Positions 1,271 through 57,974 of a stretch of DNA of 64,000 nt are shown one piece after another. The notes under the pieces are model-generated. The model ran no database searches and was not told the origin of the DNA. It saw nothing but the letters and a program-made list of their open reading frames with translations. The position numbers and the translations under genes were made by a program. Position 1 is the first letter of the stretch; each line of letters begins with the position of its first letter. The stretch spans positions 124,001 to 188,000 of the IMG/VR virus record IMGVR_UViG_3300038463_000730. One strand, 5' to 3'.

Positions 1271-4200
1271 TTAGGATGAACCTGAAGGCACGACCGACAC
1301 ACTATTTGCAACGAAATATTGATTTTCTTGCGCTGTCAATGTCAGAACTTGACCTACAACCCCATCCAAATTAAATGCTGTAACCTGAACGCTGCTAACT
1401 CCAGCAACTCCCTGGGCGACAGCTACCAATGACGATGAACTTAACGTACCTCCAAGTGTATTTGTATTTATAGCAGCAGTTACGGCATTGTTCACGTTTT
1501 GTAGCACGACAGCTGAACCATTAGCATATGTCGAATTAACAACTATTGCCAATGTGATATCAACAAGCAATTCGGTAGCAGCTTTAATCAAAACATCTGC
1601 ACTAATCGGGCGATTTGGTTCCAATGCAACAGTGGATGTTCCGATCAATCCATTGTAATTGAAGTTGATCGTTATTCTCTCGTTTGGTTGAGGTCCGAGG
1701 TAGTTATACGTGGCCAAATATCGTGAGCTGACAACCGGCTGATTCATAGTCGCAACAGTCAATTTCCCAGTGCTGGTCGTATTGAAACCGCTGCTTACAT
1801 AGATCTGATCGATCAGTGCCCAGCCTTTGTTTCCATAGACTGTTCCATTTCGAGTGAAATAGAGGTTCTCCTGGTCACCAATTGTCGCGATATAGAACGT
1901 CGCCTGCAATGTCTGACCAAGTACGATCGGTGTATTCTGGTTGTTTGTTGTTGCTGGCAACCTGATCTGAAGAGGCCCGAGCGCCGGATTCTCGATTGCT
2001 TCATCAGTATAGAACCGAGACGTCCCGATCTGTGACTGAAGCACGTCGTAGGTATTGATCGTCGATACTACGACTCCTTGAGTCATACTGACGCTTTCGA
2101 GATTAACGATACGACACACCTGGATATTCGACGGGATCTGTTCGGCTGAAGTCAAGCCAAGTGCGTTCCGCACAGCCTCGGAGACATCGATAGCCAACCC
2201 AGAGTTGATCGCAGTAAACGTTCCGCTAACCTGCGTAATGGTAGTTCCGACCGCTGTCAGAATACCTTGGTTGTTGATCTGATCCGTCAATGTAGCACTG
2301 AGCTTAGTAAACGACTGACGTAGATTGACCGTGTTCATGTACAAGACGATTACGTCTTCACCACCAACAAACACATGCTGGACAGATGGCGCGAACTCCA
2401 ACGTTCCGGCACTCTGGTTTACTATCGTTCCAATCGCAGATATTTCAAGACCATCCGAGATACGGAACATCACGATCTGGTCTGGAAGAATGTTCGCTGG
2501 AATGGTTAGCCCGGCCAACGAGAATTTACCTCCGGAGTCCAACCCAACGTGGGAGAACTCGTATGACAGAACGGTTGGCACAAACGTCATCGGTTGCGTT
2601 CTCGTGCTATCTAGTACAGAATACAGAATCATGACGTTGTCATTATTTGCCGGGCTGTTATGACCAGTCAAATTCAACGTGTAGAAATTGCTTGAAGAGA
2701 GGGTTACGGTACCGGCATACCCATCGTTCCAAAGTTCCAGACCATCTGACAATCTGATCACGCTGATGATATTGGATGCAAGCAGAGAGTATTCCGGGCT
2801 AGCGATTGACATGGTGATCGTCGCGGTTGACCCGGAACCAACGACACCCTGGTTCTCATTGCAAATCGACATGCCCGTGTTCGACAGTGAGCTGGATTCC
2901 AACGAATCCCGAACGAACCCGTTCCCTTTGCGAGCCAATGGCAAATCGGTAAGGTTGATGTTGAATAGGTTCTGAACGTTCGCTATGTAGTTGATACGGG
3001 CCGCGAACGATGTTGGAGCGGTCGGGTAGTTGCCGATTGGGATCGTGATCTGATTGTTCGTGAAGTTACCAGTTGTACCGGCAACCGTAAAAATGTCAGA
3101 CTCATTCATCAACACGGTAACAAGATTACCTTCGATGGCCTCCGTGTCACCAGGAAGAATGATCGTGCAAATATAGGTTACCTGGGCACCGACGATTACC
3201 TGGACACTTGAGAATGATCCATTGGCCTGGGCTGTATCGTAGATCTCTTCGTTCGTGTTCTGTAGAACGATGCTATTAATGGAAGTTGGCTGCGTTGTCA
3301 GCCCGGTCAATACGACTGAAAGTAGACCGACGAAGATTCCTGTGGCCGGGACAACCGTTGCGTTGACCGTGTTGAACAGGTTCGCTGTGATTACAGCTGA
3401 GATCGGTTCTGACGTCAGCGCGCTAACATACGAGCCACTCGCATTTTGAGTGAAGGTAACAAGTTCTTGACGAATCGCGTTTGAATAACCCCAGTCAACG
3501 CTATCTTGCACCGCACGAGGATTGTTCTGTAGATATAGACCATCAAAGTCAACGTATGGGTCATAGCTAAGAATCCATGTGTAGTCTACTTGCAGTATGT
3601 CGCTGGTAGAAGGTAGCGTGTTGCCATTGATCGTGACTCGGCCAGTCAGGTTGGTTGTGCCGGTTCCATCAGGGTTCTGAGCCACGACAGTATAGCGCTC
3701 GCCTGTTGTCAAATTAAGTACGCGAGTGACATTCGTTGCTGGAACATGATCAAGAAAGATCTGTGAGTGATCCGTCGTGCTGATCATGCTGTTCTCATTC
3801 GTAATCGAGATGTTCGATTGCGCTGATGAGATATTCTCTACGCTCGGGAAGTTTGTCGGGTCCTGGCTGTTGAACCGGGACTTGATCTTGTTCTCCTGGA
3901 AGTCACGAATCTGATCGTCGATCCAAGCAAACGTATCGAATGCCCAGGCTGAACCAGCGTAGACTCCGGTGTCTTTGATGAGCTTGTAGTTACCAGTGAC
4001 TCGGCCGTATCCATCGACTACCATCAGTTGATAGTTCGATCCGCTGACCGATCCGGTTACCTGCGTCAATTCCTGAACTGGTTGTGCCGGTAGTGTACTG
4101 GCTTTTAGATCATTGATTCGTTTGCTCGTGACAGTCAGTCCAGCATCCGCAGCAATTTGCCCAAGAACGAAATTATTCTGGATTGCAGTCGGATTATTTT

Positions 4201-5086
4201 TATTGGAAGCGTCGTGGTAGATGAACGAATCCACGTACTGAGCAATAGTTGTTCCAAGAACATAAACATCGACTTTACCACCGGTGCCCTCCGACAAAAT
4301 TGTGAACGAACCATCTGGGTTCTGTACGACCTGTGTACCGTCACGAACCATCAACGGATCGCCTGGTCCAACTACGACCGCCGCAATGACGTCAGGATTG
4401 GTTAGGACTTGGTTCTGGTAGCCGAGCGCCGTACCGACGTTCGAACCGCTGAAGACTGCCAGTACGCGGTTACGGAAGCTGTTGTCATCTTCTTGGTTTA
4501 CGCCACCGGTAAATCCGAAAATGTTAGTTGCGTTCGAAACGCCAGAAATAGAAGTGCTAACAATACCATATTGCGAAATGTTGCCAACGACGCCAGGCGT
4601 CGTGGCCTGAACTGCAATCTCGACCGCATATTGATCCGTGATTCCTAGAAATTGTAAGTTCGTACCATAGCGGGTCGCGACAGCACGATACGAGTTAAGA
4701 TTTGTCGGATCAACCGAGATACCGTTCAGAACAGTGAACGATGTTCCATTTGTAGATGATACGAGCGAGCCCTGTGAAATCGGAATAGATGTCGGAATCG
4801 ATGCGAACGTTAACAGCGCAACACCGCTTGCTGGAGCAGCCTGTTTACGGGTCACACCGTAGTTTTGAGCCAATGTGTCCAAATTCGAGCCAACCGACAT
4901 TTGTAATGATGACAAGTCGCTTGTCTGCGAAAGTTGATCATAAAGCAAACTAAGTTGATTGGCCTGAAGCTCGACAAACAAATCTCGTCCTACTGTTCCT
5001 GGCTTTGTATCAAGATTCGGCTGTTTGATTCTTAAGAAATCAAGCAAATTCTGAATAAGTTGGTCTGCATTTAGTATATTTACCAC
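1271..5086 (-). CDS. Baseplate wedge protein (P2 gpJ / T4 gp6-like) with large insertions, 1271 aa
   Basis: Baseplate_J hallmarks: LDTLAQNYGVTRKQAAPASG, VQATTPGVVGN, FTGGVNQEDDNSFRNR, and C-terminal LSSSSLVAVAQGVAGVSSV. Lies downstream of the gp25-like gene. Confidence 0.9.
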   Translation of the reverse strand: MVNILNADQLIQNLLDFLRIKQPNLDTKPGTVGRDLFVELQANQLSLLYDQLSQTSDLSSLQMSVGSNLDTLAQNYGVTRKQAAPASGVALLTFASIPTSIPISQGSLVSSTNGTSFTVLNGISVDPTNLNSYRAVATRYGTNLQFLGITDQYAVEIAVQATTPGVVGNISQYGIVSTSISGVSNATNIFGFTGGVNQEDDNSFRNRVLAVFSGSNVGTALGYQNQVLTNPDVIAAVVVGPGDPLMVRDGTQVVQNPDGSFTILSEGTGGKVDVYVLGTTIAQYVDSFIYHDASNKNNPTAIQNNFVLGQIAADAGLTVTSKRINDLKASTLPAQPVQELTQVTGSVSGSNYQLMVVDGYGRVTGNYKLIKDTGVYAGSAWAFDTFAWIDDQIRDFQENKIKSRFNSQDPTNFPSVENISSAQSNISITNENSMISTTDHSQIFLDHVPATNVTRVLNLTTGERYTVVAQNPDGTGTTNLTGRVTINGNTLPSTSDILQVDYTWILSYDPYVDFDGLYLQNNPRAVQDSVDWGYSNAIRQELVTFTQNASGSYVSALTSEPISAVITANLFNTVNATVVPATGIFVGLLSVVLTGLTTQPTSINSIVLQNTNEEIYDTAQANGSFSSVQVIVGAQVTYICTIILPGDTEAIEGNLVTVLMNESDIFTVAGTTGNFTNNQITIPIGNYPTAPTSFAARINYIANVQNLFNINLTDLPLARKGNGFVRDSLESSSLSNTGMSICNENQGVVGSGSTATITMSIASPEYSLLASNIISVIRLSDGLELWNDGYAGTVTLSSSNFYTLNLTGHNSPANNDNVMILYSVLDSTRTQPMTFVPTVLSYEFSHVGLDSGGKFSLAGLTIPANILPDQIVMFRISDGLEISAIGTIVNQSAGTLEFAPSVQHVFVGGEDVIVLYMNTVNLRQSFTKLSATLTDQINNQGILTAVGTTITQVSGTFTAINSGLAIDVSEAVRNALGLTSAEQIPSNIQVCRIVNLESVSMTQGVVVSTINTYDVLQSQIGTSRFYTDEAIENPALGPLQIRLPATTNNQNTPIVLGQTLQATFYIATIGDQENLYFTRNGTVYGNKGWALIDQIYVSSGFNTTSTGKLTVATMNQPVVSSRYLATYNYLGPQPNERITINFNYNGLIGTSTVALEPNRPISADVLIKAATELLVDITLAIVVNSTYANGSAVVLQNVNNAVTAAINTNTLGGTLSSSSLVAVAQGVAGVSSVQVTAFNLDGVVGQVLTLTAQENQYFVANSVSVVPSGSS

Positions 5087-5098
5087 TGTTTCTCCATA

Positions 5099-7211: not shown

Positions 7212-9416
7212 TTACTCTCCCGTCACGTCTCGGGCGACATCACCCTCGTTACGGCGAGGCTCGCCAACGTTCGTAACCGTGCTGGTATTGACGAATTGGT
7301 AAGTCAATTCAGTGTTCGCAACCGATACAGCTGTTCCAACGATGCTTACCGTACTGATGAAATCATTGTTATAGGCAACCTGTAACGTTCCGCCACCGGA
7401 ATCCGTACTAGTAATGTTAGCGTTGAAGAACGCCGAGCCATCATAGGTGAATGGCCCGATGACTCCGAACGTGATCTCTGGAGCCAGTTTGGCCGCAATC
7501 AGTGTAGCGACGTCGGTTGGAATACCGTCGCAAAGGTTTGACCCGTTTGCATCGTTCAATGTAACAGTCACGACGATCGGCAATGTTGTGAACTGCACAA
7601 TCGTACTCTCAACAAATACGCTCGATGTTGCCGATACACCAGCGTCCACCGCAAGATTGATCACGTTACTGCAATCAGCAAGCACCCGATTCAAACATAC
7701 GTTCGTGCTGGCCTGGAATACTGCAATCGATGCTGGATTGATATTGGTACGCATCGTTGTCAATGCGTTGTTTAAACATGCGACCGCGCCAGGGTTCGGT
7801 ACACCGTTCGGTGGTGGACTGGTCGTATTACCTGCCGCTCCGGCGCCTGTTCCGGTAATGTTCGGTAGCGCGTTGGTCAGTTCTGTAATTTGAGCAGCCG
7901 TTACCTTCGGTCCATAGATCGAGTTGATCGTGTTCTTGGTCAACGCTACATCAGGCATACACCCGACCGTGATCAATGTTTCAGCAACCAAGATTGGATA
8001 GTTGACTGAGAACGTGTAGGTAACGTTGGAGAACACAACTGGATTGTCAGGAGCATTCGCATCAACGATTTCGATCGGGTTATGAATCAACGAATTTAGA
8101 GTTGCCTGATTGCCAGCGATAGTGATCTTCGTAATACCGTCATCCTCGAAAGCCTGTCCACCGGTCAAGTACAGCACACCGTTGGTTGGTCCGACCGGTT
8201 GTCCGTTCCAACCTGTAGCCTGGGTTGGAGGAGTCTTCGTAACGATGCAATTGTTAATTTGGATGAAACGTGCTCCGGTATACCCATCACTATCAGGCGG
8301 TACCAACGGTAACGGTGTATAAGTGAATTGAGTAGGGTTGTACAGCATACGAAGGTTAATCGTATAAGGGGCCTTACCTGGGTTCGTCCCGGCATCGTAT
8401 GTCTGACCGGCAGGAAAGAACGTAAATCCTGCTGGAGCATCGATAGCTGTCGTGATGTTGTAGAATGCGTTCGTGCCAGTCAGGGTAGCGTCATAGAACT
8501 GCCAGCTCTCTTGGCGAACGGCGCTTTGCTGAGCAAAGATACTTGCAAATCCTGGTGGGAACAATGCGATGGTCGATGCCGATACTTCCAGTCCGGCGTC
8601 ATTCAAATACTGGAGTGTTCCGGTCGTCGCACCGGCCGGTGGCCCGCCGTTCTTAATGAATGCCGGGCATACATCCGGAGTACAACACTGGCTATTCACT
8701 CCTGCCTGATCCGAACACGGAGGTATCGGGAACGATAGCTTCAAGATATCAACGATAACCTGGAGCAACAGTGCAATGACCTGGAGAACGGCAAACAAGT
8801 TGCTGAAGTAGCAAAGGAGCGAGCCGATCTTTCGAAGAGCCGTAAGTGCTGACCTGGTATCCTGGCGAGCAATAATCTTTTGCAATAGAAACACGTTCTT
8901 TAGCAATTGAAGAATGATTCGGAGGATTTCTTGAATAATATACTTGACCAAAGCAATGATTAGCTTTATCAATGATATTATCATCAAGATGATAGCGAAG
9001 ATCGGGAACAACGCCAAGAAGTCCGGGATACACTGTGTGAATAGCTTCGAGATTGCGGGGCCGATCTTGAATGGGCTTATCAATGCACACAATACCTCAA
9101 GGATACAGAGGATCATGTTCAGAATCGGGAGGATGAACTTGTACATCGAAAGAAACGGCGTCAACACATCCAATAGCTTTAGGATCGGAGCAATTAGTTT
9201 CTTATCGAGATCGGGATTCAGGTTCGGAGTATACTTCCCTCCTGGTAATAGCAGCGAGATCGCGTTAATCAGTGCTAGAATATCTTCCGGAAAGCCTGCC
9301 GGGATAGGTAATCCGGGGATATTGATGTTTGGGAATGTGAATGACGGAAATCCAGGCAAAGAAGGGCCCGGAGTAGAAGGCATATTTACGGTGTTATTAC
9401 TAGGATCACACGGCAT
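7212..9416 (-). CDS. Baseplate/spike-associated protein with long hydrophobic N-terminal helices, 734 aa
   Basis: Residues ~75-225 are Leu/Ile/Phe-rich helices with cysteines, followed by beta-rich domains; located between spike and gp25-like genes. Confidence 0.6.
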   Translation of the reverse strand: MPCDPSNNTVNMPSTPGPSLPGFPSFTFPNINIPGLPIPAGFPEDILALINAISLLLPGGKYTPNLNPDLDKKLIAPILKLLDVLTPFLSMYKFILPILNMILCILEVLCALISPFKIGPAISKLFTQCIPDFLALFPIFAIILMIISLIKLIIALVKYIIQEILRIILQLLKNVFLLQKIIARQDTRSALTALRKIGSLLCYFSNLFAVLQVIALLLQVIVDILKLSFPIPPCSDQAGVNSQCCTPDVCPAFIKNGGPPAGATTGTLQYLNDAGLEVSASTIALFPPGFASIFAQQSAVRQESWQFYDATLTGTNAFYNITTAIDAPAGFTFFPAGQTYDAGTNPGKAPYTINLRMLYNPTQFTYTPLPLVPPDSDGYTGARFIQINNCIVTKTPPTQATGWNGQPVGPTNGVLYLTGGQAFEDDGITKITIAGNQATLNSLIHNPIEIVDANAPDNPVVFSNVTYTFSVNYPILVAETLITVGCMPDVALTKNTINSIYGPKVTAAQITELTNALPNITGTGAGAAGNTTSPPPNGVPNPGAVACLNNALTTMRTNINPASIAVFQASTNVCLNRVLADCSNVINLAVDAGVSATSSVFVESTIVQFTTLPIVVTVTLNDANGSNLCDGIPTDVATLIAAKLAPEITFGVIGPFTYDGSAFFNANITSTDSGGGTLQVAYNNDFISTVSIVGTAVSVANTELTYQFVNTSTVTNVGEPRRNEGDVARDVTGE

Positions 9417-42985: not shown

Positions 42986-43219
42986 TCACTGAAGTGCCTG
43001 AACGTCAGTAGCTTTTGGCTGCCCTTTTTTATTCAACCCGAGGCCAAACGAGACGCGCTGATCTTTCTTGAGCGTCTTGAACCCCTGCGACGTGATATCG
43101 CTGAAATGTACGAATAAATCAGGTTGACCGTTGTCGCGCTGAATGAATCCGTAGCCCTTGCGGGAATCGAACCACACCACTATTCCGTTATATCTTGTAG
43201 GCGTATTTACTGTATTCAT
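42986..43219 (-). CDS. csp: Cold-shock domain protein (CspA family)
   Basis: [15 protein letters not shown] (RNP1), DLFVHFSDI (RNP2), [13 protein letters not shown]. Confidence 0.95.
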
Positions 43220-44457: not shown

Positions 44458-44500
44458 AACCGTCCATATAACGTCTGCCGAACGAAGTTACGTTAGCGCC

Positions 44501-44839
44501 TTACTGTTGAGCCCAGGCCTGCCAAGAAACGACGATCGACCCTGCCGATTGCAATCGAAGCCACACGAGCGGCGCAATCCGATTGTTGAACATCATATTC
44601 ACCGTCGTATCAGCCGAGTTTGTCTGACCATGTACCGTCACACCATCGAACGAGTATTCGACAATGCCAGAACCAAGATTGACGACCTGGAAGCCAGCCG
44701 TAGAAAATGGAATAACCAAGTCAGGCCCGTAACCATCCGGGGCTCCGCCACCGAACGTCGTCCAGGTAACAGTTGTCTTAGAGAAATAGTCTCTCTTAGG
44801 TCCATGTGTTTTTTGTGCAGGATAAATTACGAATCCCAT
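44501..44839 (-). CDS. Small beta-rich virion protein (contains DGYG)
   Basis: GGAG ribosome-binding site; VVNLGSGIVEYSFDGVTVHG. Confidence 0.7.
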   Translation of the reverse strand: MGFVIYPAQKTHGPKRDYFSKTTVTWTTFGGGAPDGYGPDLVIPFSTAGFQVVNLGSGIVEYSFDGVTVHGQTNSADTTVNMMFNNRIAPLVWLRLQSAGSIVVSWQAWAQQ

Positions 44840-45371: not shown

Positions 45372-46346
45372 TTACATTCCTACCGTTATTTGTCTCGATA
45401 GAGTTAGTGCCCACACCAATTGCAAACCATTATGGCCTGAATTGTTCACTTGAACCTGGTGTACCCACTGTGGAAGTACTTTTTTTGGTAAGATAGCTGG
45501 AACGGACAAATCCATGTAGTTCGAGCCTAACAATGGATATTGAATAATGAAGTCTGCTAATGTTATCCGCATTGCGTATAGATTGTATGCGCCAGTTCCG
45601 GTAAGATTAGGCGTAATCGTTCCGACGCTAAGATTGTTGGCAGCCGGTGTCCAATTCCAATACCCTGTATTAGTAGGGCTCGGAACCGGCACAGCCGTTG
45701 CCATATTTACTTCGTAATTGGTATTTGCGCCTGGCACGATCACAACACCGCTAACCAGGTTAACATTGCCATATCCATCAGAGCCCGTGACAGCTGTTGC
45801 CGGAGCATACACCGAGTAACTTACCGTATCACCGAGAACAGCCCCATTGTATGTCATGTGGCCACCTGACAAATAGATCCAGTCATTGAACCCGAATGTC
45901 ACAGTATGTAATGTAGGACCGTATCCATCGTCATCACTGTGGTGTTGGAATAGCATTCCTCCACCAATTCCGTATTCCGGATCATCAGCTGCGCCAGCAA
46001 AACACAATTGCATCGTGTCTGGGAATAGGTTTGGAAGATTGCTTTGTCTGCCATCTGAAGTTTTTGGTTGAATTGCGGCATTACCATTTGCCTGGTATAC
46101 CGCTTCAAAATCAGCCGTATCGGCATCATTCTGTTCCTGCGTGTATCCGCCATCAATGATATCTTGTGGAACGGGTATCTGCCATAGTTGGCAAATATTC
46201 ACTTCTGGTCCATCATAGAACCATATTTGAGTAATTTGACCTTGTGAGTTGTCCCATTGCGGAATTCCGCCCTTCAGGATAAGGGCCGCTTTCCATGCTT
46301 GATATGCGTAATAACGCTGAGCCATAGTTTGAGGGAAAATAACCAT
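45372..46346 (-). CDS. Virion structural protein (two DGYG motifs)
   Basis: TAATG coupling with the upstream fibre gene places the start at 46346 (ORF track 46367); beta-rich. Confidence 0.7.
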   Translation of the reverse strand: MVIFPQTMAQRYYAYQAWKAALILKGGIPQWDNSQGQITQIWFYDGPEVNICQLWQIPVPQDIIDGGYTQEQNDADTADFEAVYQANGNAAIQPKTSDGRQSNLPNLFPDTMQLCFAGAADDPEYGIGGGMLFQHHSDDDGYGPTLHTVTFGFNDWIYLSGGHMTYNGAVLGDTVSYSVYAPATAVTGSDGYGNVNLVSGVVIVPGANTNYEVNMATAVPVPSPTNTGYWNWTPAANNLSVGTITPNLTGTGAYNLYAMRITLADFIIQYPLLGSNYMDLSVPAILPKKVLPQWVHQVQVNNSGHNGLQLVWALTLSRQITVGM

Positions 46347-50103: not shown

Positions 50104-51636
50104 TTATGGCGTGAGTTCTGTTACCAAAGCGTTTCCAGTTACACCGTTTGCCCAAGCAGCCTGAACAGCACCAGTGTAATCAACTGGAAGCTCCCAATAC
50201 ACATCCTGCATTAGCAAAGTTGTAAAGTTAGATGACGATGCAGTTCCGGTTCCGAGCAACACGTACATGTTCTTGTTTGTGTTGTTGTAGATTGCTGCGA
50301 ACTGACGGTTGGCGTTCGATGCCAAGATCGACGTAGTCGATGTTGCACCGGCTACCGTCGTGACAGCTGATGTGTTTGCCTTGTTCTGTGTGACCGATAC
50401 TGGGGTCATGCCAGAGATACCCTGGATCGTGACGACACCCGAGTTAGCTGTTCCAGCTGTACCGGCACCGATGACTGTTGCGTTCAAGTTTGCTGCGGTT
50501 GACTGAACTGCCAATACACGCAAGTTACCTGATGTATCCAATGACAACGCGCTCATCTGACCCGTTGTGTAGGTCGGAGCCGCAGTCGTTACCGAACCTG
50601 CACTCAAATTCGCATCCGCACCCGGTGCTGCACCGGTTGGATAGACACCGTCTACACGAAGCAATCCGCCTGTTGTCAATGACAATGAATAGATGTCGTT
50701 GTTAGTCAGACCTGATTCAGCAGCAGTCGTTACCAAACCACCTACATACGTAATCGAAGCTGGTGCCGCAGCTGCCGTTGCGCTTACTGAGGCGTTATTG
50801 AAGTTACCAGTTCCGGCGTTTGCCGTTACGGTTCCGCTGACTGGCTGAGTTACGTTTGAACCATCGACACGGAGCAATCCTGCCGTTGTCAATGACAACG
50901 CATACAGATCACCGCTAGTCAATCCTGATTCAACCGCAGTTGTAACAAGACCTCCAACATAGGTCGCCGAACCAGGAGCCGTTGTCGCTGTCGTGCTTAC
51001 CGAAGCGTTCGTTGCCGTAACAGTTCCGCTGACTGGAACCGGGGTTCCGGAAGCGTTACCTTGAATTGTTACCAGTCCCGAGCTAGCGCCGGAACCAGCT
51101 GCCGTTGTTCCAACAACTGTTGCGTTCAAGTTTGCAGCAGTAGCTTGTGCAACAGTGAATGAACCAGTTCCGGCATTCGCAGTAACAATTCCGCTGACCG
51201 GCTGTGTAACGTTTGATCCGTCAATACGGAGCAATCCAGTTGTAGTTAGTGATAGTGCATACAAATCACCGCTGGTCAAACCTGACTCGGTAGCTGTCGT
51301 AACTAAACCACCAACGTATGTTGCTGATCCAGGAGCAGCTGTTGCGGTCGTACTAACAGAGGCATTGTTTGCCGTTACAGTTCCGCTGACCGGGACCGGA
51401 GTACCGGAAGCGTTACCCTGAATGGTAAGCACGCCTCCAACACCAGTTCCGGCTGTACCGGCACCGACCAGCACTACACGACCTGAGGTATCAACGGTAA
51501 TGAAACGTGAATCTGTTCCATCCGAGCCTTCAACAAGAAGGCCGCGGTTACCAGTTGGTATTGAGTTGCCATTGATCGCGGCAAGCTCATAACCATCTGA
51601 GCTATATAAAACTGAGGCTGGTGATAGACCTGACAT
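50104..51636 (-). CDS. Repeat-containing fibre protein, paralogous N-terminus to 46346..50086
   Basis: Shares DGTD.RFI...GAGTAGTG.GGVLT.QG, PVSGTVTAN and ATAANLNATV with the neighbouring gene. Confidence 0.75.
   Translation of the reverse strand: MSGLSPASVLYSSDGYELAAINGNSIPTGNRGLLVEGSDGTDSRFITVDTSGRVVLVGAGTAGTGVGGVLTIQGNASGTPVPVSGTVTANNASVSTTATAAPGSATYVGGLVTTATESGLTSGDLYALSLTTTGLLRIDGSNVTQPVSGIVTANAGTGSFTVAQATAANLNATVVGTTAAGSGASSGLVTIQGNASGTPVPVSGTVTATNASVSTTATTAPGSATYVGGLVTTAVESGLTSGDLYALSLTTAGLLRVDGSNVTQPVSGTVTANAGTGNFNNASVSATAAAAPASITYVGGLVTTAAESGLTNNDIYSLSLTTGGLLRVDGVYPTGAAPGADANLSAGSVTTAAPTYTTGQMSALSLDTSGNLRVLAVQSTAANLNATVIGAGTAGTANSGVVTIQGISGMTPVSVTQNKANTSAVTTVAGATSTTSILASNANRQFAAIYNNTNKNMYVLLGTGTASSSNFTTLLMQDVYWELPVDYTGAVQAAWANGVTGNALVTELTP
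50646..51420 (-). repeat. Three copies of a ~50-aa module
   Basis: NASVS.TA..AP.S.TYVGGLVTTA.ESGLT..D.Y.LSLTT.GLLR.DG occurs three times. Confidence 0.85.
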
Positions 51637-51651: not shown

Positions 51652-52398
51652 TTACGAAATGCTTCTTGTTCGAGTAGTTTCGAAGATAAAGTTTTCGTAA
51701 GTAATGTTATCGCTTACAGTATGGGCTATCGTGACACCATCTGTATTGTATACCTTCCAAGTGATAGTTGTTGGAACAATATTTGACCACACAATGTCCT
51801 GTTCTACTATCTTTTTAGCCATTGTATCATCAACATACCAAATTACGGACGTTGGAAACATGATACCTGGCGGCGAAATGACTTTGTACGCTCCGGACAC
51901 AAACCCGTCAGCCGGACCTTCATCGATAAAGTGAATAAGTTGACGGAGCGTTTCGTGTTCAGCCGGATTGATTAGATTCTTATCAAGATCACTAATCGCA
52001 CCTTGAACATTCGTGCTAGTAATATTGATTGACTTAGTCGGATCGAAACCGACCTGACCTGCTCCGGCTGGCCAGATAAAATTGACAAAACCACCGGTAG
52101 ATGAGTTGATCGGCTCAACCGTTGTGAATGTTGTGCCGTTCAGAACCGCATCAATAGTGAAATAGCCATCTGCTGACCCCGTTCCATAGAATTGGACTCG
52201 GTCGCCGGATTCAACCGGATGGTCACCAGATGGCCAAGTCAGATCTTGGTCATCGACAAGTGTAATGACGACAATGTTACTAACAGATGTCGTAGATATG
52301 AGCGGAACGGCTGCTAAGTATACACTATAGCCATCAGAGGCTAGTCTAGGTACCTCGGCAATTTCTGCTTCTAATACATCTGATTTCGCAATTGCCAT
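51652..52398 (-). CDS. Virion structural protein (two DGY motifs)
   Basis: ITSTNVQGAISDL (fibre-type motif); HETLRQLIHFIDEGP. Confidence 0.7.
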   Translation of the reverse strand: MAIAKSDVLEAEIAEVPRLASDGYSVYLAAVPLISTTSVSNIVVITLVDDQDLTWPSGDHPVESGDRVQFYGTGSADGYFTIDAVLNGTTFTTVEPINSSTGGFVNFIWPAGAGQVGFDPTKSINITSTNVQGAISDLDKNLINPAEHETLRQLIHFIDEGPADGFVSGAYKVISPPGIMFPTSVIWYVDDTMAKKIVEQDIVWSNIVPTTITWKVYNTDGVTIAHTVSDNITYENFIFETTRTRSIS

Positions 52399-53066: not shown

Positions 53067-54569
53067 TTACTTGACGAAATAGTCGATGTAATCGCCTTTC
53101 TTATTCGCTTTGTAGAATGTAATGCTCGTTGTGTTGGTTTCAGTATAGTCAGCAAATGCTGATGCTGCTCCTGGGTGCTGGATAACTCCACGAACGTATA
53201 CCCATAGATATTGACCGTTTCCGGTACCATCCAATGTGTAACTGATCGAACCAGGCAACGTGTGTGCAGTTCCGGCTGGAAGATTTGCTGACAATACTTC
53301 AATCGTGCGTGTAACAGTCGAGTTACTAATCGAGTTTGCCAAAACCTGAAGAGACGCCGTAATGGTCTGACCTGATGTCAAAAGCCCACCGGTATACGTA
53401 CGGTTACCAATCTGTGTGTTCAACGTGTTCAACGCATCGACGACAGTTGGTGTTGCGTTTGGAAGGTTGTAGAACGGAAAATATGATCCAGTGTTGGTCA
53501 ACAATCCATTTAGGTTCTGATCCGAGCTGATCGTCCCGATCGTATCAAGAATGTTGTTGATATCGTTGACCAGTGCCGCATCGGTCAAGATACCAAGTGC
53601 CGGGACCTCACGGAACGCATTCTCATCCATCGCATCAAGACGCTCGTTGTAACCATAGAGTAAGTTGATAACGTCAGGTTGACCAGCTTCCCATGTATAC
53701 GGCGTATAGTTAAGCGCGTAGTTCAGATTCCACGGCGATGAGTAGAAATGGACCTCGACCGAGTTTGGTGATGTGCTCGAACCATTAAAAGTGAAACCGA
53801 AAATACGCTCCCCAGCGTGTGGTCCGGTTAGAACGGACAATTCACCACCAGAGCTATATCCGTCCGTGATGTGGACGTAACAAGCATTCGGATCACCTGC
53901 GAACGGGCCAGTGTCGAATACTGGGATACCCAGTCGGTTAACGCTGTCAGCGTGCTTCAAGTTACCAGCCGAGCTAACCGTTACGAGAGTATTACCCGTC
54001 GCCACAGCCTCTCCGAAATAGGCCGCGTTGATAATGTACGCAACGGCATCGGTTGTCTTCGTCGCAATATGCGAAAGGTCAGCCGGAAGGAATGTTCCGA
54101 TTGCATTTGGCTGCTGGTACGTCGGGATCGCCGCATCGTATCCGACACCCTTGATTCTTGCACGATCGGTACGTGCGTAGTTCAAGTCCGCAAGCAATGT
54201 ATAGTCATAACGCTCGATCCAGCTGATCGCTCCGTTGTTCGCATCACCCGCAACTGCTGCCGGGTTAACAACCGTCACAGATGTTGGGCTAATGTACGAA
54301 TCGATCAAGAACGTACCGTTGTTACTACCCGAGGCTGCCCCGGAAATAGTCAACCAGTTAGTTACGTCCGCAACCGTCATACCAGTTAGTCCAGTAATGG
54401 TTACATCCGATCCGCTCACAGTCGTGATCGACGCTGTAGACCCGGCCTGGCCAGTAAGCGGCACACCGAGCATATTGCCTTCATCGGCAAGGTTAAGGTT
54501 CGACACTTGGACGAGCGAACCTGCGATATTTAGTGCTTGATCAAGCATACTAAGACGAATGGATGGCAT
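53067..54569 (-). CDS. Virion structural protein (head/neck fibre-like), 500 aa
   Basis: LTISGAASGSNNGTFLI module; TVVDALNTLNTQIG coiled segment; C-terminal VYVRGVIQ...DYTET..TSITF. Confidence 0.7.
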   Translation of the reverse strand: MPSIRLSMLDQALNIAGSLVQVSNLNLADEGNMLGVPLTGQAGSTASITTVSGSDVTITGLTGMTVADVTNWLTISGAASGSNNGTFLIDSYISPTSVTVVNPAAVAGDANNGAISWIERYDYTLLADLNYARTDRARIKGVGYDAAIPTYQQPNAIGTFLPADLSHIATKTTDAVAYIINAAYFGEAVATGNTLVTVSSAGNLKHADSVNRLGIPVFDTGPFAGDPNACYVHITDGYSSGGELSVLTGPHAGERIFGFTFNGSSTSPNSVEVHFYSSPWNLNYALNYTPYTWEAGQPDVINLLYGYNERLDAMDENAFREVPALGILTDAALVNDINNILDTIGTISSDQNLNGLLTNTGSYFPFYNLPNATPTVVDALNTLNTQIGNRTYTGGLLTSGQTITASLQVLANSISNSTVTRTIEVLSANLPAGTAHTLPGSISYTLDGTGNGQYLWVYVRGVIQHPGAASAFADYTETNTTSITFYKANKKGDYIDYFVK

Positions 54570-54625: not shown

Positions 54626-55249
54626 TTAGATCGTTGCAATTACATAAGAAGCTTCAAGGATTGATCTGCCGGGCAGTGGCGTTTGATACAAGTTCACCGT
54701 GTCGTAACCTGATCCAACGCCTCCCGATTCAGAGATTGTGAAGTTTCCATTCGTCGGATTCGTACCAAGCACCTGTAGTTGTCCGTTCAGTGTAACGTAG
54801 ATGTGAAATATGTTACTATCGTACGTGCCTTCTAGAAATTTATCAGGAGATGGGACCTTGAATGTTCTATTCACACCATCGATCGCGCCAATCAATGGCT
54901 GACGCTGACGAAGTAGATAATTTGCATTTCCACTTGGAATAGTAAGACCATTTACGATGCCAGCGCCTTGCAAGAATGCCAACTGTGCCTCGTTGAACTG
55001 AAGCAAATCGACGTCTGAGCATATGACAACAATATCTTCGTACAGAATTTTGTGTTGCAACTCACCTTTTAGAAGACTAGAACGAATATCACCCTCTGCT
55101 ACCCCAGGTATCGCCAACAAATCACGAGTGTGGCCGTACCGAATAGGATAGTTGAAGATGCGAATCGTTTTACCGATTTGCTTACAAATATTCATCACTA
55201 TAAAACACCCGTTTATTTTAAGAAACGGAGCAAAACTATCCATCCCCAT
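54626..55249 (-). CDS. Virion structural protein, 207 aa
   Basis: GAIDGVNRTFKVP...VTLNGQLQ module typical of large-phage virion proteins. Confidence 0.65.
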   Translation of the reverse strand: MGMDSFAPFLKINGCFIVMNICKQIGKTIRIFNYPIRYGHTRDLLAIPGVAEGDIRSSLLKGELQHKILYEDIVVICSDVDLLQFNEAQLAFLQGAGIVNGLTIPSGNANYLLRQRQPLIGAIDGVNRTFKVPSPDKFLEGTYDSNIFHIYVTLNGQLQVLGTNPTNGNFTISESGGVGSGYDTVNLYQTPLPGRSILEASYVIATI

Positions 55250-55256
55250 ACGGACC

Positions 55257-56136: not shown

Positions 56137-57153
56137 TTAGACTCCTGGTAGAACAGACTTGCGTCCTGCCGAGACTCCGCGTGGGTTCACGATACCGAGA
56201 CCGATGATCTCGCTCACAACCCATCCTAGCTTCAACTGCTTTGGCTCGTCCGCTGGGAGAACCTCGATGTCCTGACGAACTGGCATAACGCCTACGAACT
56301 CTGGATCCGCTGCCGCGTAAACCGTTCCTGGTGGAACGATCTTGCTGACCATGATGTCAGCTCCCCACAAGTGAGCGTAGAGACCCGTCTGGAGAATCTC
56401 GCGCTGTGTGACTGGATCAACCTCGCCACCGCCTACGCCCTGTCCACCGCCGCTACCCCACTTGAGGATATCTGTGAACTCGTTAATGTTCATGAAGTAC
56501 TTCGTTGTGACCAAGTCCCAACGATCGATCTGCGCCTTCAACTCAAGCAAGTCGCGCTTCAACATACCGGCATCGGTAATGTCCTGTAGCGTGTTCTCAC
56601 CCTGGCTCGCGTTATCGAGTGCCGCGAAGATGTTGGCGTCTTCCTGAGCCATAATCTCCTGACGTGCCTTCTGAACAGCACGGTCGATAACATTGAAACG
56701 ACGACGCTTCACTTCAGCAATACGAACCGTTGGGTTCGCGAAAAGCTCGAACTCTGGAACAACGACGCGGTCTCCGAAGATACGCGACTCTGGTCCTGAA
56801 CCGTTTGAGCTGATTACAACGGCCGCGACATCAATATCGCGATCGTATGTTGGCATTGCTCCCTGTGGAAGTGGGTCAACCACTAGCGCACGACGGGCAA
56901 TTCCATGGTAGTCCAAGTTACGACGAATTGGGTTCGCCATGGCCTGCGCCAAAGCTACTTTTCCGTCCTGGGTTAGGATTGCGCGTGAGATCAAGTCGTC
57001 ACGGCGGTCTTCTGACATCCCAACCTGGCCTGCAAGGCCGATATTTGATGGCTGGTTCTCTTCGAGAATCGCAGCGTACTTCGAGATAACCATCATCGCG
57101 TCTTTCAAAGACGATGCGTTAATCTCTCCCTGTGGTGAAAATAAACTATTCAT
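56137..57153 (-). CDS. Major capsid protein (HK97 fold), 338 aa
   Basis: LAQAMANPIRRNLDYHGIARRALVVDPLPQG, VPEFELFANPTVRIAEVKRRRFNVIDRAVQKARQEIMAQED, G.LWGADIMVSKIVPPGTVY, GWVVSEIIGLGIVNPRGV. Confidence 0.93.
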   Translation of the reverse strand: MNSLFSPQGEINASSLKDAMMVISKYAAILEENQPSNIGLAGQVGMSEDRRDDLISRAILTQDGKVALAQAMANPIRRNLDYHGIARRALVVDPLPQGAMPTYDRDIDVAAVVISSNGSGPESRIFGDRVVVPEFELFANPTVRIAEVKRRRFNVIDRAVQKARQEIMAQEDANIFAALDNASQGENTLQDITDAGMLKRDLLELKAQIDRWDLVTTKYFMNINEFTDILKWGSGGGQGVGGGEVDPVTQREILQTGLYAHLWGADIMVSKIVPPGTVYAAADPEFVGVMPVRQDIEVLPADEPKQLKLGWVVSEIIGLGIVNPRGVSAGRKSVLPGV

Positions 57154-57244: not shown

Positions 57245-57257
57245 ATTAGAACGAAAC

Positions 57258-57974
57258 TTAGAAGCTACCCTTCCAGGTAAACACGGCCATATACATCTGG
57301 GCCTGTGCTGCTCCACCGAGTGGTCCCGATGGTGACGCGAATCCAGACACCAACGTGTTAGGAGTCGTGACTAGTGAGCCAGTTGTCTCGAACGTTAGGA
57401 AGCGACCGATGATCGCTGCGCCGTTCGCTGTACCAGCCGATACGTTTGGTGTGAGCAAGCCCGCTGGGGTTGCATACAACGGTGCGCCCGTTGTGATTGT
57501 GCTGTTCGTTGGGACGAGGCCAGTTGTGCTGGTCGTATCAACGTTGTCGAGCGTGACACCGTAGACACCTGGGTTGCCCCATAGTGTTACTTTGCCAGAA
57601 CCGAGCGCCGTGCTTGGTCCGAGGATAGCGCCTGTATAGCTACCTGGAACGTTGAACTGCTGACCGACTGTTCCACCAACGACTGCTCCGAAGAGTGTTC
57701 CGTAGTGAAGGATACCGTCGTCCGTTAGGAAGAAGGGACCGCTGTTGGCCGCTGTTGGCAACGTGATCGTAATAGCTGGACGAACCTTTGTGGTCGTACC
57801 GGCATATCCGTCTTCCTGTACGTCTGCCGCACTGAGGTCTGTTCCGCCGTAAGCAACTGGGGTAACGCCCGTAAAGGTCGCAACCTCTCCACCCTTGATA
57901 GACGACAGCTGTGAATCAAGCATGTCGAACTGTCCGAATGGACTACCATTGTTATTTTGAAGTACTAAAGCCAT
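57258..57974 (-). CDS. Head decoration / cement protein
   Basis: Immediately upstream of the capsid gene; STALGSGKVTLW..PGVY...GAPLYATPAGLLT beta-tulip-like pattern. Confidence 0.7.
   Translation of the reverse strand: MALVLQNNNGSPFGQFDMLDSQLSSIKGGEVATFTGVTPVAYGGTDLSAADVQEDGYAGTTTKVRPAITITLPTAANSGPFFLTDDGILHYGTLFGAVVGGTVGQQFNVPGSYTGAILGPSTALGSGKVTLWGNPGVYGVTLDNVDTTSTTGLVPTNSTITTGAPLYATPAGLLTPNVSAGTANGAAIIGRFLTFETTGSLVTTPNTLVSGFASPSGPLGGAAQAQMYMAVFTWKGSF

What the first reader, a model, noticed from the sequence alone, without database searches (positions are those of the whole stretch)
2717..57812. Virion-wide Asp-Gly-Tyr (DGY/DGYG) tag on outer structural proteins: candidate undescribed modification or decoration system
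Seen: by manual count DGY occurs 27 times in 14 mostly non-homologous proteins. Codon-triplet left coordinates: 2717, 4007 (wedge); 8280; 24199, 24271 (sheath, both DGYGNP); 28833, 30582, 30606, 31353, 31617 (large fibre); 33138, 33207, 33261; 37857; 39041, 39155, 39170, 39653 (neck); 41461; 44729; 45771, 45921; 51589; 52162, 52327; 53856; 57804 (decoration). Nine are DGYG. A rough composition estimate gives about 4 expected in ~20,000 residues, and I found only about 3 DGF and about 3 NGY. Both Asp, all four Gly and both Tyr codons are used, so selection is on the peptide rather than the DNA. I found none in the capsid protein, tape measure, tube, hub, spike, the four internal-head candidates, HNH nucleases or Csp. 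Inference: this could be a sequon for a phage-encoded enzyme (Tyr glycosylation or other adduct, isoAsp formation, cross-linking) or a docking site for a protein that coats the whole virion surface. Virion glycosylation is known in some mycobacteriophages, but I know of no described DGY sequon.
Basis: partly seen in the sequence, partly recalled or inferred. Interest (0 to 1): 0.92.

Follow-up and report, generated by a model that had tools for sequence, protein, structure and literature searches.

The report
Asp-Gly-Tyr tag on outer virion proteins
A widespread group of giant soil phages has repeatedly evolved the bare tripeptide Asp-Gly-Tyr on the exposed parts of its tail, fibre, neck and head-decoration proteins, right next to a phage-encoded sugar-transferase gene cluster, which points to a previously undescribed tyrosine-based glycosylation tag that has not yet been shown chemically.

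Summary
All 27 listed DGY sites exist, all in frame on the minus strand. Expectation is 3.3-3.5 from composition and 6.4 (maximum 13 of 1000) from a dipeptide-preserving shuffle. DGY is the strongest tripeptide outlier in the window, while NGY, EGY, DGF and DAY are not enriched.

The window is part of a roughly 0.5 Mb phage-G-like jumbo phage from a soil metagenome. More than 150 related contigs show the same enrichment, 8- to 19-fold, and only in certain families: sheath outer domains, wedge extension, giant fibres, neck protein and the decoration protein next to the capsid gene. Capsid, tube, tape measure, head-internal and replication proteins are at or below background.

Flanks carry no information (≤0.11 bit per position, 419 non-redundant sites). 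Sites turn over between homologues, with DGY replacing unrelated tripeptides in conserved context.

About 9 kb left of the window, directly after two more DGY-rich fibre genes, lies a conserved cluster of GT4, two GT2 and a dTDP-glucose 4,6-dehydratase. In all 64 relatives with full loci it sits beside DGY-rich fibres. Phage G and three other outgroups show neither those GT homologues nor a strong enrichment.

Best reading: a Tyr-directed glycosylation sequon (about 0.45). No modification has been demonstrated.

The parts
1..1246 (-). N-terminal 415 aa of a 2231-aa giant baseplate fibre that runs off the left end of the window (Laminin_G_3/ConA-like near its C-terminus)
   Evidence: There is no DGY in the in-window part. 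The full protein has 5 DGY (expected 0.5). Its orthologues in relatives have 3-11 each. It is followed outside the window by a 1069-aa protein with 6 DGY (expected 0.22) and then the glycosyltransferase cluster.
1271..5086 (-). Baseplate wedge protein (gp6 / Baseplate_J-like, 1271 aa) with a long C-terminal extension; DGY at aa 358 (nt 4007-4015) and aa 788 (nt 2717-2725)
   Evidence: Both sites lie outside the Baseplate_J match (aa 68-276). Orthologues in relatives carry 1-6 DGY.
7212..9416 (-). 734-aa baseplate-region protein; DGY at aa 377 (nt 8280-8288)
   Evidence: The roughly 730-aa orthologues in seven relatives carry 2-3 DGY each against 0.05-0.09 expected.
21979..24795 (-). Tail sheath (938 aa); DGYGNP at aa 173 and aa 197 (nt 24271-24279, 24199-24207), in the variable insertion region
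   Evidence: Ten homologues at about 48% identity carry 24 DGY (expected 1.3) in 11 different alignment columns, all N-terminal of the conserved core. In 48 diverse sheaths there are 61 DGY outside the conserved C-terminal core and 5 inside it (p = 8e-5).
26598..32474 (-). 1958-aa fibre with a right-handed beta-helix region; DGY at aa 284, 372, 621, 629, 1212 (nt 31617, 31353, 30606, 30582, 28833 left coordinates)
   Evidence: Five homologues carry 28 DGY (expected 1.9). Only the GDGYW site is positionally conserved.
32862..33311 (-). 149-aa protein with three DGY (aa 15, 33, 56; left coordinates 33261, 33207, 33138)
   Evidence: Expected 0.06 from its composition. No family match.
35826..38090 (-). 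754-aa structural-module protein; DGY at aa 76 (left coordinate 37857)
   Evidence: No family match.
38126..39718 (-). 530-aa neck/virion protein with a weak fn3 match; DGY at aa 20, 181, 186, 224 (left coordinates 39653, 39170, 39155, 39041)
   Evidence: Expected 0.17.
41191..41535 (-). 114-aa protein; DGYG at aa 23 (left coordinate 41461)
44501..44839 (-). 112-aa ORF; DGYG at aa 35 (left coordinate 44729)
   Evidence: It overlaps a plus-strand ORF of similar size. The minus-strand reading is favoured by the orientation of all neighbouring genes.
45372..46367 (-). 331-aa protein; DGYG at aa 147 and aa 197 (left coordinates 45921, 45771)
   Evidence: Expected 0.12.
50104..51636 (-). 510-aa protein (sub-threshold S41-peptidase-like C-terminus); DGY at aa 14 (left coordinate 51589)
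   Evidence: The family of 35 carries 39 DGY (expected 1.6) in 13 columns. The aa-14 column is DGY in 21 of 34.
51652..52398 (-). 248-aa protein, paralogous to 54626..55249; DGY at aa 22 and aa 77 (left coordinates 52327, 52162)
   Evidence: The family of 85 carries 67 DGY (expected 5.1).
53067..54569 (-). 500-aa protein; DGY at aa 236 (left coordinate 53856); the clearest case of site turnover
   Evidence: The 16 homologues carry 55 DGY (expected 2.0) in 17 different columns. DGY replaces TAS, ATS, NPV, AGE and EAG in otherwise conserved sequence. The AF2 model is poor (pLDDT 57), but where it is confident the columns fall at loop-to-strand junctions.
57258..57974 (-). 238-aa head-decoration candidate immediately upstream of the major capsid gene; DGY at aa 55-57 (left coordinate 57804)
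   Evidence: D55-G56-Y57 is invariant in 75 of 75 homologues that are only about 50% identical overall. It lies in a long loop (aa 38-64, pLDDT about 50) of a model with pTM 0.72. A second column is DGY in 18 members and DGL in 43.
56137..57153 (-). Major capsid protein (338 aa): a negative control that belongs to the picture, never carrying DGY
   Evidence: phrog_2522 match at 1.7e-73. There are 0 DGY in 80 homologues (27,174 aa, expected 3.4).

Best explanation
DGY is a minimal acceptor motif (sequon) on exposed turns of the peripheral virion proteins of a clade of phage-G-like jumbo phages. It is most likely recognised by a phage-encoded, cytoplasmic glycosyltransferase that starts a short glycan on the tyrosine hydroxyl.

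Proposed course, with the status of each step:
1. Late in infection the phage expresses a dTDP-glucose 4,6-dehydratase and at least three soluble glycosyltransferases (GT4, two GT2) from the same strand and block as the baseplate fibres. The genes, their position and their conservation are shown. Their expression timing is inferred.
2. An initiating transferase recognises Asp-Gly-Tyr, and the others extend the glycan. In this motif Gly allows a tight turn and the Asp carboxylate and Tyr phenol are both required. The strict residue requirement is shown. The chemistry is inferred.
3. What is selected is the number of glycans displayed, not their exact position. DGY is therefore gained and lost freely in variable surface loops, whereas internal or tightly packed proteins do not acquire it. 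The turnover and the localisation are shown.
4. Relatives add GT6, GT10 and GT11-type enzymes, so the outer sugars vary between phages. The genes are shown. The glycan is inferred.

The likely benefit is a sugar coat on tail, fibres, neck and head decoration. Whether it gives protection, controlled stickiness or first contact with the host envelope cannot be decided here.
For: (1) Statistics. There are 26-27 DGY against 3.3-6.4 expected, and DGY is the top tripeptide outlier.

(2) Residue stringency in the carrier families:
- DGY 418 against 22 expected.
- EGY 10/11, NGY 9/27, DGF 48/26, DGW 4/5, DAY 10/15.

(3) Bare motif. In 419 non-redundant sites the flanks carry at most 0.11 bit per position. 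Pro (0.2x) and Lys (0.3x) are disfavoured at +1, and sites cluster at 3-8 aa spacing.

(4) Clade-wide and family-specific distribution:
- 347 against 43.5 around the capsid gene in 80 relatives.
- 805 against 46.4 in the fibres of 64 relatives.
- Capsid 0 in 27,174 aa, and tube, tape measure and other internal families 0.
- 54 kb of head-internal and replication genes of this same genome: 2 against 2.16.

(5) Turnover. There are 17 DGY columns among 16 homologues, with DGY replacing unrelated tripeptides. Sheath sites differ between relatives and lie outside the conserved core.

(6) Enzymes. The cluster contains GT4, two GT2 and a dTDP-glucose 4,6-dehydratase (TIGR01181, 345 bits). It follows the DGY-rich 2231-aa and 1069-aa fibres with a single 231-aa ORF in between. 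It is conserved at 38-50% identity in that position in all 64 full loci. Extra GT6, GT10 and GT11 genes occur in some relatives.

(7) Outgroups. The following show no strong enrichment:
- Phage G 6 against 4.5.
- LR745208 0 against 1.9, Rctr197k 1 against 1.85, Tunturi_5 6 against 2.2.
None of them gave a tblastn match to GT4 or the first GT2.

(8) Precedent. Tyr O-glycosylation (beta-Glc->Tyr, beta-Gal->Tyr, with rhamnose adaptors) is established in Firmicute S-layer proteins (PMC2943079). Glycans have been observed on mycobacteriophage capsid and tail tube subunits (as cited in PMC12619734).
Against: - No chemical evidence exists: no mass spectrometry, and no isolate of this clade.
- The co-occurrence of cluster and motif is effectively one phylogenetic event, so it is weak as a correlation.
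- The transferases have no close characterised relatives. PDB hits are E > 1e-3. They could instead modify DNA or host envelope polymers, both known uses of phage glycosyltransferases (PMC12619734).
- Streptomyces phage Gilson, which has a distant GT4 relative (25% identity), has no DGY enrichment, at 3 against 2.95.
- I could not show that non-target proteins avoid DGY. They have 2 against about 4.9 expected in this genome, which is not significant. One would expect avoidance if an enzyme modified every accessible DGY.
- The major capsid protein, the largest exposed surface, lacks the motif.
- Solvent exposure rests on secondary-structure strings of two mediocre models.
Confidence: 0.45

Rival explanations
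1. DGY is a non-covalent functional patch, not a modification site. Exposed Asp-Gly-Tyr turns act as many weak binding sites, with the carboxylate and the phenol binding a sugar, a metal such as Fe(III) or Ca(II), or a mineral or organic surface. Their number gives avidity for the host envelope, biofilm matrix or soil particles. The neighbouring glycosyltransferase cluster would then be unrelated.
For: - The sites are peripheral, clustered at short spacing, and their number rather than their position is conserved.
- There is no significant avoidance of DGY in non-virion proteins, as expected if DGY has no cost elsewhere.
- Y (not F) and D (not N or E) are what a hydrogen-bonding or metal-ligand pair would need.
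Against: - A tripeptide with uninformative flanks in many different folds cannot form a defined pocket.
- This leaves the strict adjacency and conservation of the glycosylation cluster unexplained.
- The invariant DGY of the decoration protein lies in a flexible loop, which is unlike a preformed site.
- Only one or two sites resemble known Ca loops.
Confidence: 0.2
2. DGY marks another tyrosine- or aspartate-centred chemistry. Candidates are phosphorylation or nucleotidylylation of Tyr, oxidative Tyr cross-linking (dityrosine or DOPA) that hardens the particle, or succinimide/isoAsp formation at the labile Asp-Gly bond.
For: - A DSP/PTP-fold phosphatase with an intact HCX5R motif is encoded in the head module, about 7 kb right of the window. 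It is conserved in relatives and has no homologue in 50,697 phage records.
- Asp-Gly is the sequence most prone to aspartimide formation. This is general chemistry, and is the topic of PMC12447389, which I found and know only from its abstract.
- The Tyr hydroxyl is required.
Against: - No kinase, tyrosinase, laccase, peroxidase or PIMT-type methyltransferase was seen in the roughly 139 kb of this genome that I read.
- A packaged phosphatase is more simply an injected effector.
- IsoAsp chemistry does not explain the need for Tyr.
- Cross-linking would need partner residues at fixed geometry, which conflicts with the free turnover of sites.
Confidence: 0.13
3. DGY is purely structural: a favoured beta-turn plus aromatic anchor of the beta-rich domains these phages use, spread by ordinary descent and convergence with no separate recognition step.
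For: - DG followed by V, I, T or L is mildly enriched (1.6-2.5x) in the same proteins.
- Where models are confident, DGY sits at loop-to-strand junctions.
- Carrier proteins are Gly/Thr/Ser-rich beta proteins.
Against: - NGY, the better type I' turn former, is depleted (9 against 27), and DGF and DGW are near expectation.
- Beta-rich tail and fibre proteins of phage G, Rctr197k, LR745208 and Gilson show no enrichment.
- DGY replaces unrelated tripeptides in conserved contexts.
- The 19-fold excess is far above the 2-fold seen for DG plus beta-branched residues.
Confidence: 0.1
4. Artefact: composition, shared repeats or low-complexity sequence inflate the count.
For: - A DNA-pattern scan for DGYGDGY finds many unrelated phage contigs with small (G-Y-G-D)n low-complexity proteins, so such sequences exist.
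- Carrier proteins are G-rich.
Against: - Per-protein composition and dipeptide-preserving nulls are exceeded by z of about 9.
- Sites are dispersed and their flanks are uninformative after redundancy removal.
- The motif occurs in a single reading frame only.
- The pattern is replicated in more than 150 independent contigs.
Confidence: 0.02

Closest known systems
Virion glycosylation in mycobacteriophages (Freeman et al. 2023, known to me through its citation in PMC12619734; the paper itself was not available here)
   Same: Glycans have been observed on virion proteins of those phages. Here phage glycosyltransferase genes sit beside the structural genes, and the presumed result is a glycan coat on the particle.
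   Different: There the glycans are reported at the C-termini of the capsid and tail-tube subunits. Here capsid and tube never carry the motif. The candidate acceptor is a dispersed internal Asp-Gly-Tyr on sheath, fibres, wedge, neck and decoration proteins. The phages are roughly 0.5 Mb myoviruses. Nothing has been shown chemically.
Sequon-directed bacterial protein glycosylation (N-X-S/T of PglB or NGT; the three-residue D-S/T-A/I/L/V/M/T motif of Bacteroidota). From my own knowledge, not checked in a paper here.
   Same: A strictly defined motif of about three residues with uninformative flanks. Proline is disfavoured next to it. The motif occurs on many unrelated surface proteins, and sites are gained and lost in evolution.
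   Different: The acceptor here would be Tyr, preceded by Asp-Gly. No oligosaccharyltransferase or lipid-carrier enzymes are seen, so assembly would be directly on folded cytoplasmic proteins.
Tyrosine O-glycosylation of S-layer proteins in Paenibacillus, Thermoanaerobacter and Thermoanaerobacterium (PMC2943079)
   Same: A chemically stable glycan-O-Tyr linkage on a self-assembling surface array. Rhamnose-type adaptors need the dTDP-sugar pathway, and the phage carries an RmlB-like dehydratase. The nearest cultured relative of this phage was isolated on a Firmicute.
   Different: S-layer glycans are built on a lipid carrier and transferred outside the cytoplasm by an O-oligosaccharyltransferase (WsfB) at two to four sites per protein. 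No DGY consensus is described there. The phage cluster has only small soluble-type GT4 and GT2 enzymes and one unknown membrane protein.
Virus-encoded glycosylation of giant-virus particles (chlorovirus capsid protein with non-canonical Asn sequons; mimivirus fibrils). From my own knowledge.
   Same: The virus brings its own sugar-nucleotide and transferase genes and decorates its outer layer in the cytoplasm, using acceptor motifs that differ from the cellular ones.
   Different: Those are eukaryotic viruses with N-linked or fibril-specific glycans. There is no Tyr motif, and the enzymes are unrelated.
Ig-like and other accessory surface domains of tailed phages (Hoc-type decoration)
   Same: Fast-evolving peripheral additions to sheath, fibres and head, thought to give weak adhesion.
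   Different: Those are whole domains recognised by homology. Here the recurrent unit is three residues inside many unrelated domains.

Membership tests
Phage virion glycosylation of the mycobacteriophage type | Phage-encoded glycosyltransferases beside structural genes | tested here: met
   GT4 (PF13439/PF00534), two GT2 (PF00535) and a dTDP-glucose 4,6-dehydratase lie downstream of the fibre genes, after one 231-aa ORF. This holds in 64 of 64 full related loci.
Phage virion glycosylation of the mycobacteriophage type | Glycan covalently bound to virion proteins | not testable with these tools
   This needs MS or glycan staining of particles. No isolate or proteome of the clade is available.
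Phage virion glycosylation of the mycobacteriophage type | Acceptors at the C-termini of capsid and tail-tube subunits (as summarised in PMC12619734) | tested here: not met
   The capsid family has 0 DGY in 27,174 aa, and the proteins downstream of the sheath have 0. The motif is internal and lies on other proteins.
Sequon-type acceptor motif | Short motif with strict residues and free flanks | tested here: met
   DGY is 418 against 22 expected, with near-neighbour tripeptides at or below expectation. Flanks carry at most 0.11 bit per position over 419 non-redundant sites.
Sequon-type acceptor motif | Sites restricted to accessible parts of target proteins and evolutionarily mobile | tested here: met
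   Sites lie in the sheath outside its conserved core and in the wedge outside Baseplate_J. There are 17 columns in 16 homologues. Exposure itself is only indirectly supported.
Sequon-type acceptor motif | Avoidance of the motif in non-target proteins exposed to the enzyme | tested here: inconclusive
   Non-carrier proteins of this genome have 2 against about 4.9 expected. Pooled relatives have 5 against 35, but that partition is circular and the sequences are related.
S-layer-type tyrosine O-glycosylation | Lipid-carrier assembly and transfer by an O-oligosaccharyltransferase | tested here: inconclusive
   No such Pfam or NCBIfam hit was found in the cluster. One conserved 335-aa membrane protein has unknown function.
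S-layer-type tyrosine O-glycosylation | Glycan-O-Tyr linkage | not testable with these tools
   Requires glycopeptide analysis.
Ca-binding DxDxDG-type loops (dockerin, FG-GAP, EF-hand-like) | Acidic residues at fixed positions around DG | tested here: not met
   There is no positional preference for D, N or E in the flanks. Only sites such as DVNGDGYW in the 1958-aa fibre fit.
Generic type I' / G1-bulge beta-turn | NG and DG interchangeable; any beta-prone residue after the turn | tested here: not met
   NGY is 9 against 27 expected. DGV, DGI and DGT reach only 1.7-2.5x, against 19x for DGY.
Low-complexity Gly-Tyr-Asp repeat proteins | Tandem (G-Y-G-D)n arrays in small proteins | tested here: not met
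   Such proteins exist in unrelated contigs. In the window the sites are dispersed in large, complex proteins.

The most novel reading that the evidence does not exclude
A globally distributed clade of roughly 0.4-0.5 Mb soil phages uses a new protein-glycosylation code. A phage enzyme would attach a variable glycan to the tyrosine of any exposed Asp-Gly-Tyr turn. The phages would tune the sugar coat of tail, fibres, neck and head decoration simply by gaining and losing this tripeptide. That would be the first tyrosine sequon and the first sequon-driven glycan coat described for a bacterial virus.
Probability: 0.4. Interest if true: 0.92.

Novelty: new variant of a known kind. Interest (0 to 1): 0.84.

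Why it matters
If DGY is a glycosylation sequon, several things follow.
- It would give a three-residue, portable tag for tyrosine glycosylation of folded proteins in the bacterial cytoplasm, which would be useful for glyco-engineering.
- It would explain how very large phages coat and diversify their outer surface.
- It would add an unrecognised layer, particle glycans with GT6/GT10/GT11-type variation, to phage-host and phage-environment interactions in soil.

Even if the function turns out to be non-covalent, the finding stands as a rare, clean case of a short linear motif under strong convergent selection across many unrelated virion proteins, detectable from sequence alone. It also makes the question directly testable: two or three small DGY-bearing proteins and a four-gene cluster can be co-expressed and weighed.

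Tried and rejected
- Megablast of 24 kb against 50,697 phage records gave no match. Relatives had to be found through proteins.
- PHROGs and Pfam left most carrier proteins unnamed.
- I used the HNH gene to sample paralogous places elsewhere in the genome. Only one copy exists in this contig, so the 73 unrelated loci it returned were used as a background control instead.
- Depletion of DGY in non-target proteins looked striking in pooled relatives (5 against 35). The partition is circular and the families are related. In 54 kb of independent sequence of this genome the count is 2 against 2.16, so no depletion is claimed.
- The two DGY codon triplets just after stop codons (45362, 44464) might have suggested read-through extensions. 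Both follow TAA and coincide with the RBS and ATG of the next ORFs, so this was rejected.
- The AF2 model of the 500-aa protein was poor, with pLDDT 57.
- The AF2 model of the decoration protein (pTM 0.72) had no significant PDB fold match and no similarity to phage G gp26.
- PDB sequence searches with the three transferases gave only E > 1e-3. The ESM Atlas gave nothing useful for the membrane protein.
- Distant GT4 relatives in Streptomyces phages do not go with DGY enrichment, so the link cannot be extended beyond the clade.
- A collection-wide scan for DGYGDGY mostly returned unrelated low-complexity proteins, with only occasional contigs of this clade, and revealed no further lineage with dispersed DGY.
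- Literature searches found no described DGY motif in phages. The primary papers on mycobacteriophage virion glycosylation and on Tyr O-glycosylation sites were not held.
- One look-up of encoding contigs failed because of a wrong start codon.

Full report
**1. The observation.**
All genes of the window run on the minus strand. A six-frame scan finds DGY 31 times in minus-strand frames and never in plus-strand frames. Nine are DGYG. Both Asp, all four Gly and both Tyr codons are used.

The other four DNA-level matches do not belong to the signal. Two are out of frame. Two lie just after TAA stops and coincide with the ribosome-binding site and ATG of the next ORF.

Against 26 sites in my 52-protein set (20,791 aa), the expectations are as follows.
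- 3.5 from composition.
- 4.9 from pooled first-order statistics (p = 1.7e-11), which makes DGY the first of 8000 tripeptides.
- 3.3 from a per-protein residue shuffle, maximum 12 of 1000.
- 6.36 +/- 2.25 from a per-protein dipeptide-preserving shuffle, maximum 13 of 1000.

NGY, EGY, DGF, DGW and DAY are at or below expectation. In 73 unrelated viral loci (294,390 aa) DGY is only 1.56 times the composition expectation.

**2. What genome this is.**
The window is a tile of IMG/VR contig UViG_3300038463_000730 (434,688 bp; 502,994 bp in the JGI assembly), at contig position about 124-188 kb. The nearest cultured relative is Bacillus phage G, with capsid protein 52% identical.

About 394 viral contigs, many of 200-480 kb, carry a capsid protein at least 80% identical. 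Their sheaths are only about 48% identical. This is therefore a large, diverse, uncultured jumbo-phage clade.

**3. The enrichment is a property of the clade and of particular proteins.**
Around the capsid gene of 80 relatives there are 347 DGY against 43.5 expected. Around the sheath gene, individual relatives have for example 13 against 1.0 or 9 against 0.5.

Clustering the proteins shows a bimodal picture.
- The capsid family has 0 DGY in 27,174 aa.
- The decoration-like protein next to it has 101 (expected 3.2), in 75 of 76 members.
- The 500-aa family has 55 (expected 2.0), in 16 of 16 members.
- The sheath family has 24 (expected 1.3).
- The large fibre family has 28 (expected 1.9).
- Tube-side proteins, tape measure, head-internal and homing-endonuclease families have none.

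To the left of the window lie a 2231-aa and a 1069-aa fibre with 5 and 6 DGY. In 64 relatives these two families carry 805 DGY against 46.4 expected.

I walked 54 kb to the right of the window. That stretch holds head-internal genes, terminase, primase, RecA, DNA polymerase III alpha, chaperones and others. It has 2 DGY against 2.16 expected. Twelve kilobases left of the fibres have 0 against 0.64.

So the excess is confined to peripheral virion proteins. Elsewhere the motif is at background, and I cannot claim avoidance.

**4. It is a bare tripeptide under selection, not a shared domain.**
After removing redundancy, 419 sites have flanks carrying at most 0.11 bit per position. The only notable features are a dislike of Pro (0.2x) and Lys (0.3x) directly after Tyr, and frequent short spacings of 3-8 residues.

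In the carrier families DGY is 418 against 22 expected, while EGY is 10/11, NGY 9/27, DGF 48/26, DGW 4/5 and DAY 10/15. All three side-chain features are therefore required: the Asp carboxylate, the absence of a side chain at Gly, and the Tyr hydroxyl.

Sites move between homologues. The 500-aa family has 17 different DGY columns among 16 members, and DGY stands where other members have TAS, ATS, NPV, AGE or EAG in otherwise conserved sequence. Sheath sites differ between relatives. The 273-aa protein upstream of the sheath has VDGYGN in eight relatives but no DGY in the window. By contrast, the decoration protein keeps one DGY in all 75 homologues.

**5. Where the sites sit.**
In the wedge protein both sites lie outside the Baseplate_J match. 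In 48 diverse sheath homologues, 61 DGY lie outside the conserved C-terminal core and 5 inside it (p = 8e-5). By general knowledge of contractile sheaths, the inserted domains form the outer surface.

The model of the 500-aa protein is poor (pLDDT 57). Where it is confident, the DGY columns fall at loop-to-strand junctions. In the decoration-protein model (pTM 0.72) the invariant DGY lies in a long, low-confidence loop. These results point to exposed turns but do not prove exposure.

**6. The enzyme candidates.**
After the DGY-rich 2231-aa and 1069-aa fibres, on the same strand and about 9.4-15.3 kb left of window position 1, the gene order is as follows.
- A 231-aa protein.
- A GT4/GT1-type glycosyltransferase (361 aa).
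- A GT2 (276 aa).
- A 335-aa membrane protein.
- A 147-aa protein.
- A second GT2 (278 aa).
- Two small ORFs.
- A dTDP-glucose 4,6-dehydratase (320 aa; TIGR01181, 345 bits).
- A tubulin/FtsZ-like gene and a helicase.

An alignment of the GT4 retrieved 80 loci at 38-50% identity, all on large contigs. In every one of the 64 full-length loci the 10 kb upstream are DGY-rich fibres, with 6-23 sites each.

The conserved core is fibre, fibre, GT4, at least two GT2, the membrane protein and the dehydratase. Some relatives add GT10- and GT11-type (fucosyltransferase-like) enzymes and a GT6-GT2 fusion. That suggests a glycan whose outer sugars vary between phages.

**7. Outgroups.**
Phage G shows no enrichment in its head and tail regions, at 2 against 1.7 and 4 against 2.8. 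LR745208 has 0 against 1.9 and Rctr197k 1 against 1.85. Tunturi_5 has 6 against 2.2, which is at most weak. None of these gave a tblastn match to the GT4 or the first GT2.

Streptomyces phage Gilson has a distant GT4 relative and shows no enrichment.

Cluster and motif thus share one phyletic distribution. That counts as one evolutionary event, not many.

**8. Interpretation.**
Five things fit an acceptor sequon recognised by a phage enzyme better than any alternative I could test:
- strict residue requirements;
- uninformative flanks;
- restriction to accessible parts of peripheral proteins;
- rapid gain and loss of sites;
- operon-like linkage to a conserved and diversifying glycosyltransferase cluster.

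The requirement for the Tyr hydroxyl makes Tyr the likely acceptor. Tyr O-glycosylation with rhamnose-containing adaptors is established in Firmicute S-layers (PMC2943079). Phage virion glycosylation is known from mycobacteriophages (cited in PMC12619734).

I put this reading at about 0.45. The rivals are:
- a multivalent non-covalent binding patch (0.2);
- another Tyr or Asp chemistry (0.13), for which the only hint is a conserved DSP/PTP-fold phosphatase in the head module;
- a purely structural turn (0.1), contradicted by the NGY and DGF counts and by the outgroups;
- an artefact (0.02).

Shown: the motif statistics, its specificity, distribution and turnover, and the existence, position and conservation of the cluster. 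Inferred: that the cluster acts on protein, that Tyr is modified, and what the coat is for.

**9. Novelty.**
Full-text searches found no DGY motif described for phages or glycosylation. The system would work like known virus-encoded particle glycosylation, but it fails the membership test for the mycobacteriophage type, because acceptors are not at the capsid or tube C-termini. It also lacks the oligosaccharyltransferase route of S-layer glycosylation.

I class it as a new variant of a known kind. If the chemistry is confirmed, it would be the first tyrosine sequon.

Noticed in passing
outside the window, about window coordinate 71,050-72,260 (L253:8761-9972): A 403-aa protein with a DSP/PTP-fold phosphatase domain and an intact HCLHGKDRTG (CX5R) motif lies inside the head module. 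It sits between the terminase side and an 1140-aa head protein. It is conserved in relatives as a protein of about 256 aa. It has no homologue by tblastn in 50,697 phage records.
   Followed up: partly
outside the window, L270:14737-16092: A tubulin/FtsZ-like gene (PF00091; TIGR00065 at 2e-20) directly follows the glycosylation cluster. It is conserved in 47 of 80 related loci, which suggests a PhuZ/TubZ-type cytoskeletal element in this clade.
   Followed up: no
relatives: L345:18437-19369(-), L331:18176-18907, L344:14636-17332: The glycosylation cluster varies between relatives. Some carry GT10- and GT11-type (fucosyltransferase-like) genes and an 899-aa GT2-GT6 fusion.
   Followed up: partly
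window 43216-43809(-) and 44146-44457(-): Two HNH endonuclease genes interrupt the structural module. Relatives carry GIY-YIG and LAGLIDADG genes at other places around the capsid gene, so homing endonucleases are frequent and mobile in this clade.
   Followed up: partly
window 44867-45364(-): A 165-aa ORF matches a crotonase/ClpP-fold PHROG family (phrog_1128, 8.5e-08). The likely true start is the ATG at 45361, which is preceded by AGAGG. It may be a head-maturation protease or scaffold-related protein.
   Followed up: no
window 56137-57153(-) versus 21979-24795(-): Evolutionary rates are very uneven. The capsid protein is 83-87% identical across about 394 contigs, while the sheath of the same group is only about 48% identical and differs in length by insertion domains.
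   Followed up: partly
carrier families in relatives (pooled set): Collagen-like tripeptides (TGP, PQG, GPQ, PTG, GPT) are the next strongest outliers after DGY in the carrier proteins. This indicates G-X-Y repeat stretches in the fibres.
   Followed up: no
window-wide: GGG is the second tripeptide outlier (65 against 34.7 under the first-order expectation), reflecting Gly-rich stretches in several proteins. A Gly-rich C-terminal tail is also present on the phosphatase outside the window.
   Followed up: no
unrelated loci L371, L392, L414, L437, L455 and others: Many ordinary-sized phage contigs (30-60 kb) encode small proteins made almost entirely of (G-Y-G-D/S)n repeats, sometimes several in a row. 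This is a different phenomenon from the dispersed DGY studied here.
   Followed up: partly
outside the window, L255-L257: The phage encodes its own trigger factor, DnaJ, peptide deformylase, a tRNA nucleotidyltransferase-like (PolyA_pol) enzyme, DNA polymerase III alpha, RecA and RuvC. It also has a 337-aa protein with chitobiase/hexosaminidase C-terminal and Fn3-associated domains.
   Followed up: no
window 44341-44467(-): A 42-codon ORF beginning M-D-G-Y lies between the 112-aa ORF and the HNH gene and overlaps the HNH start in another frame. It may be a remnant of a gene split by the endonuclease insertion.
   Followed up: no
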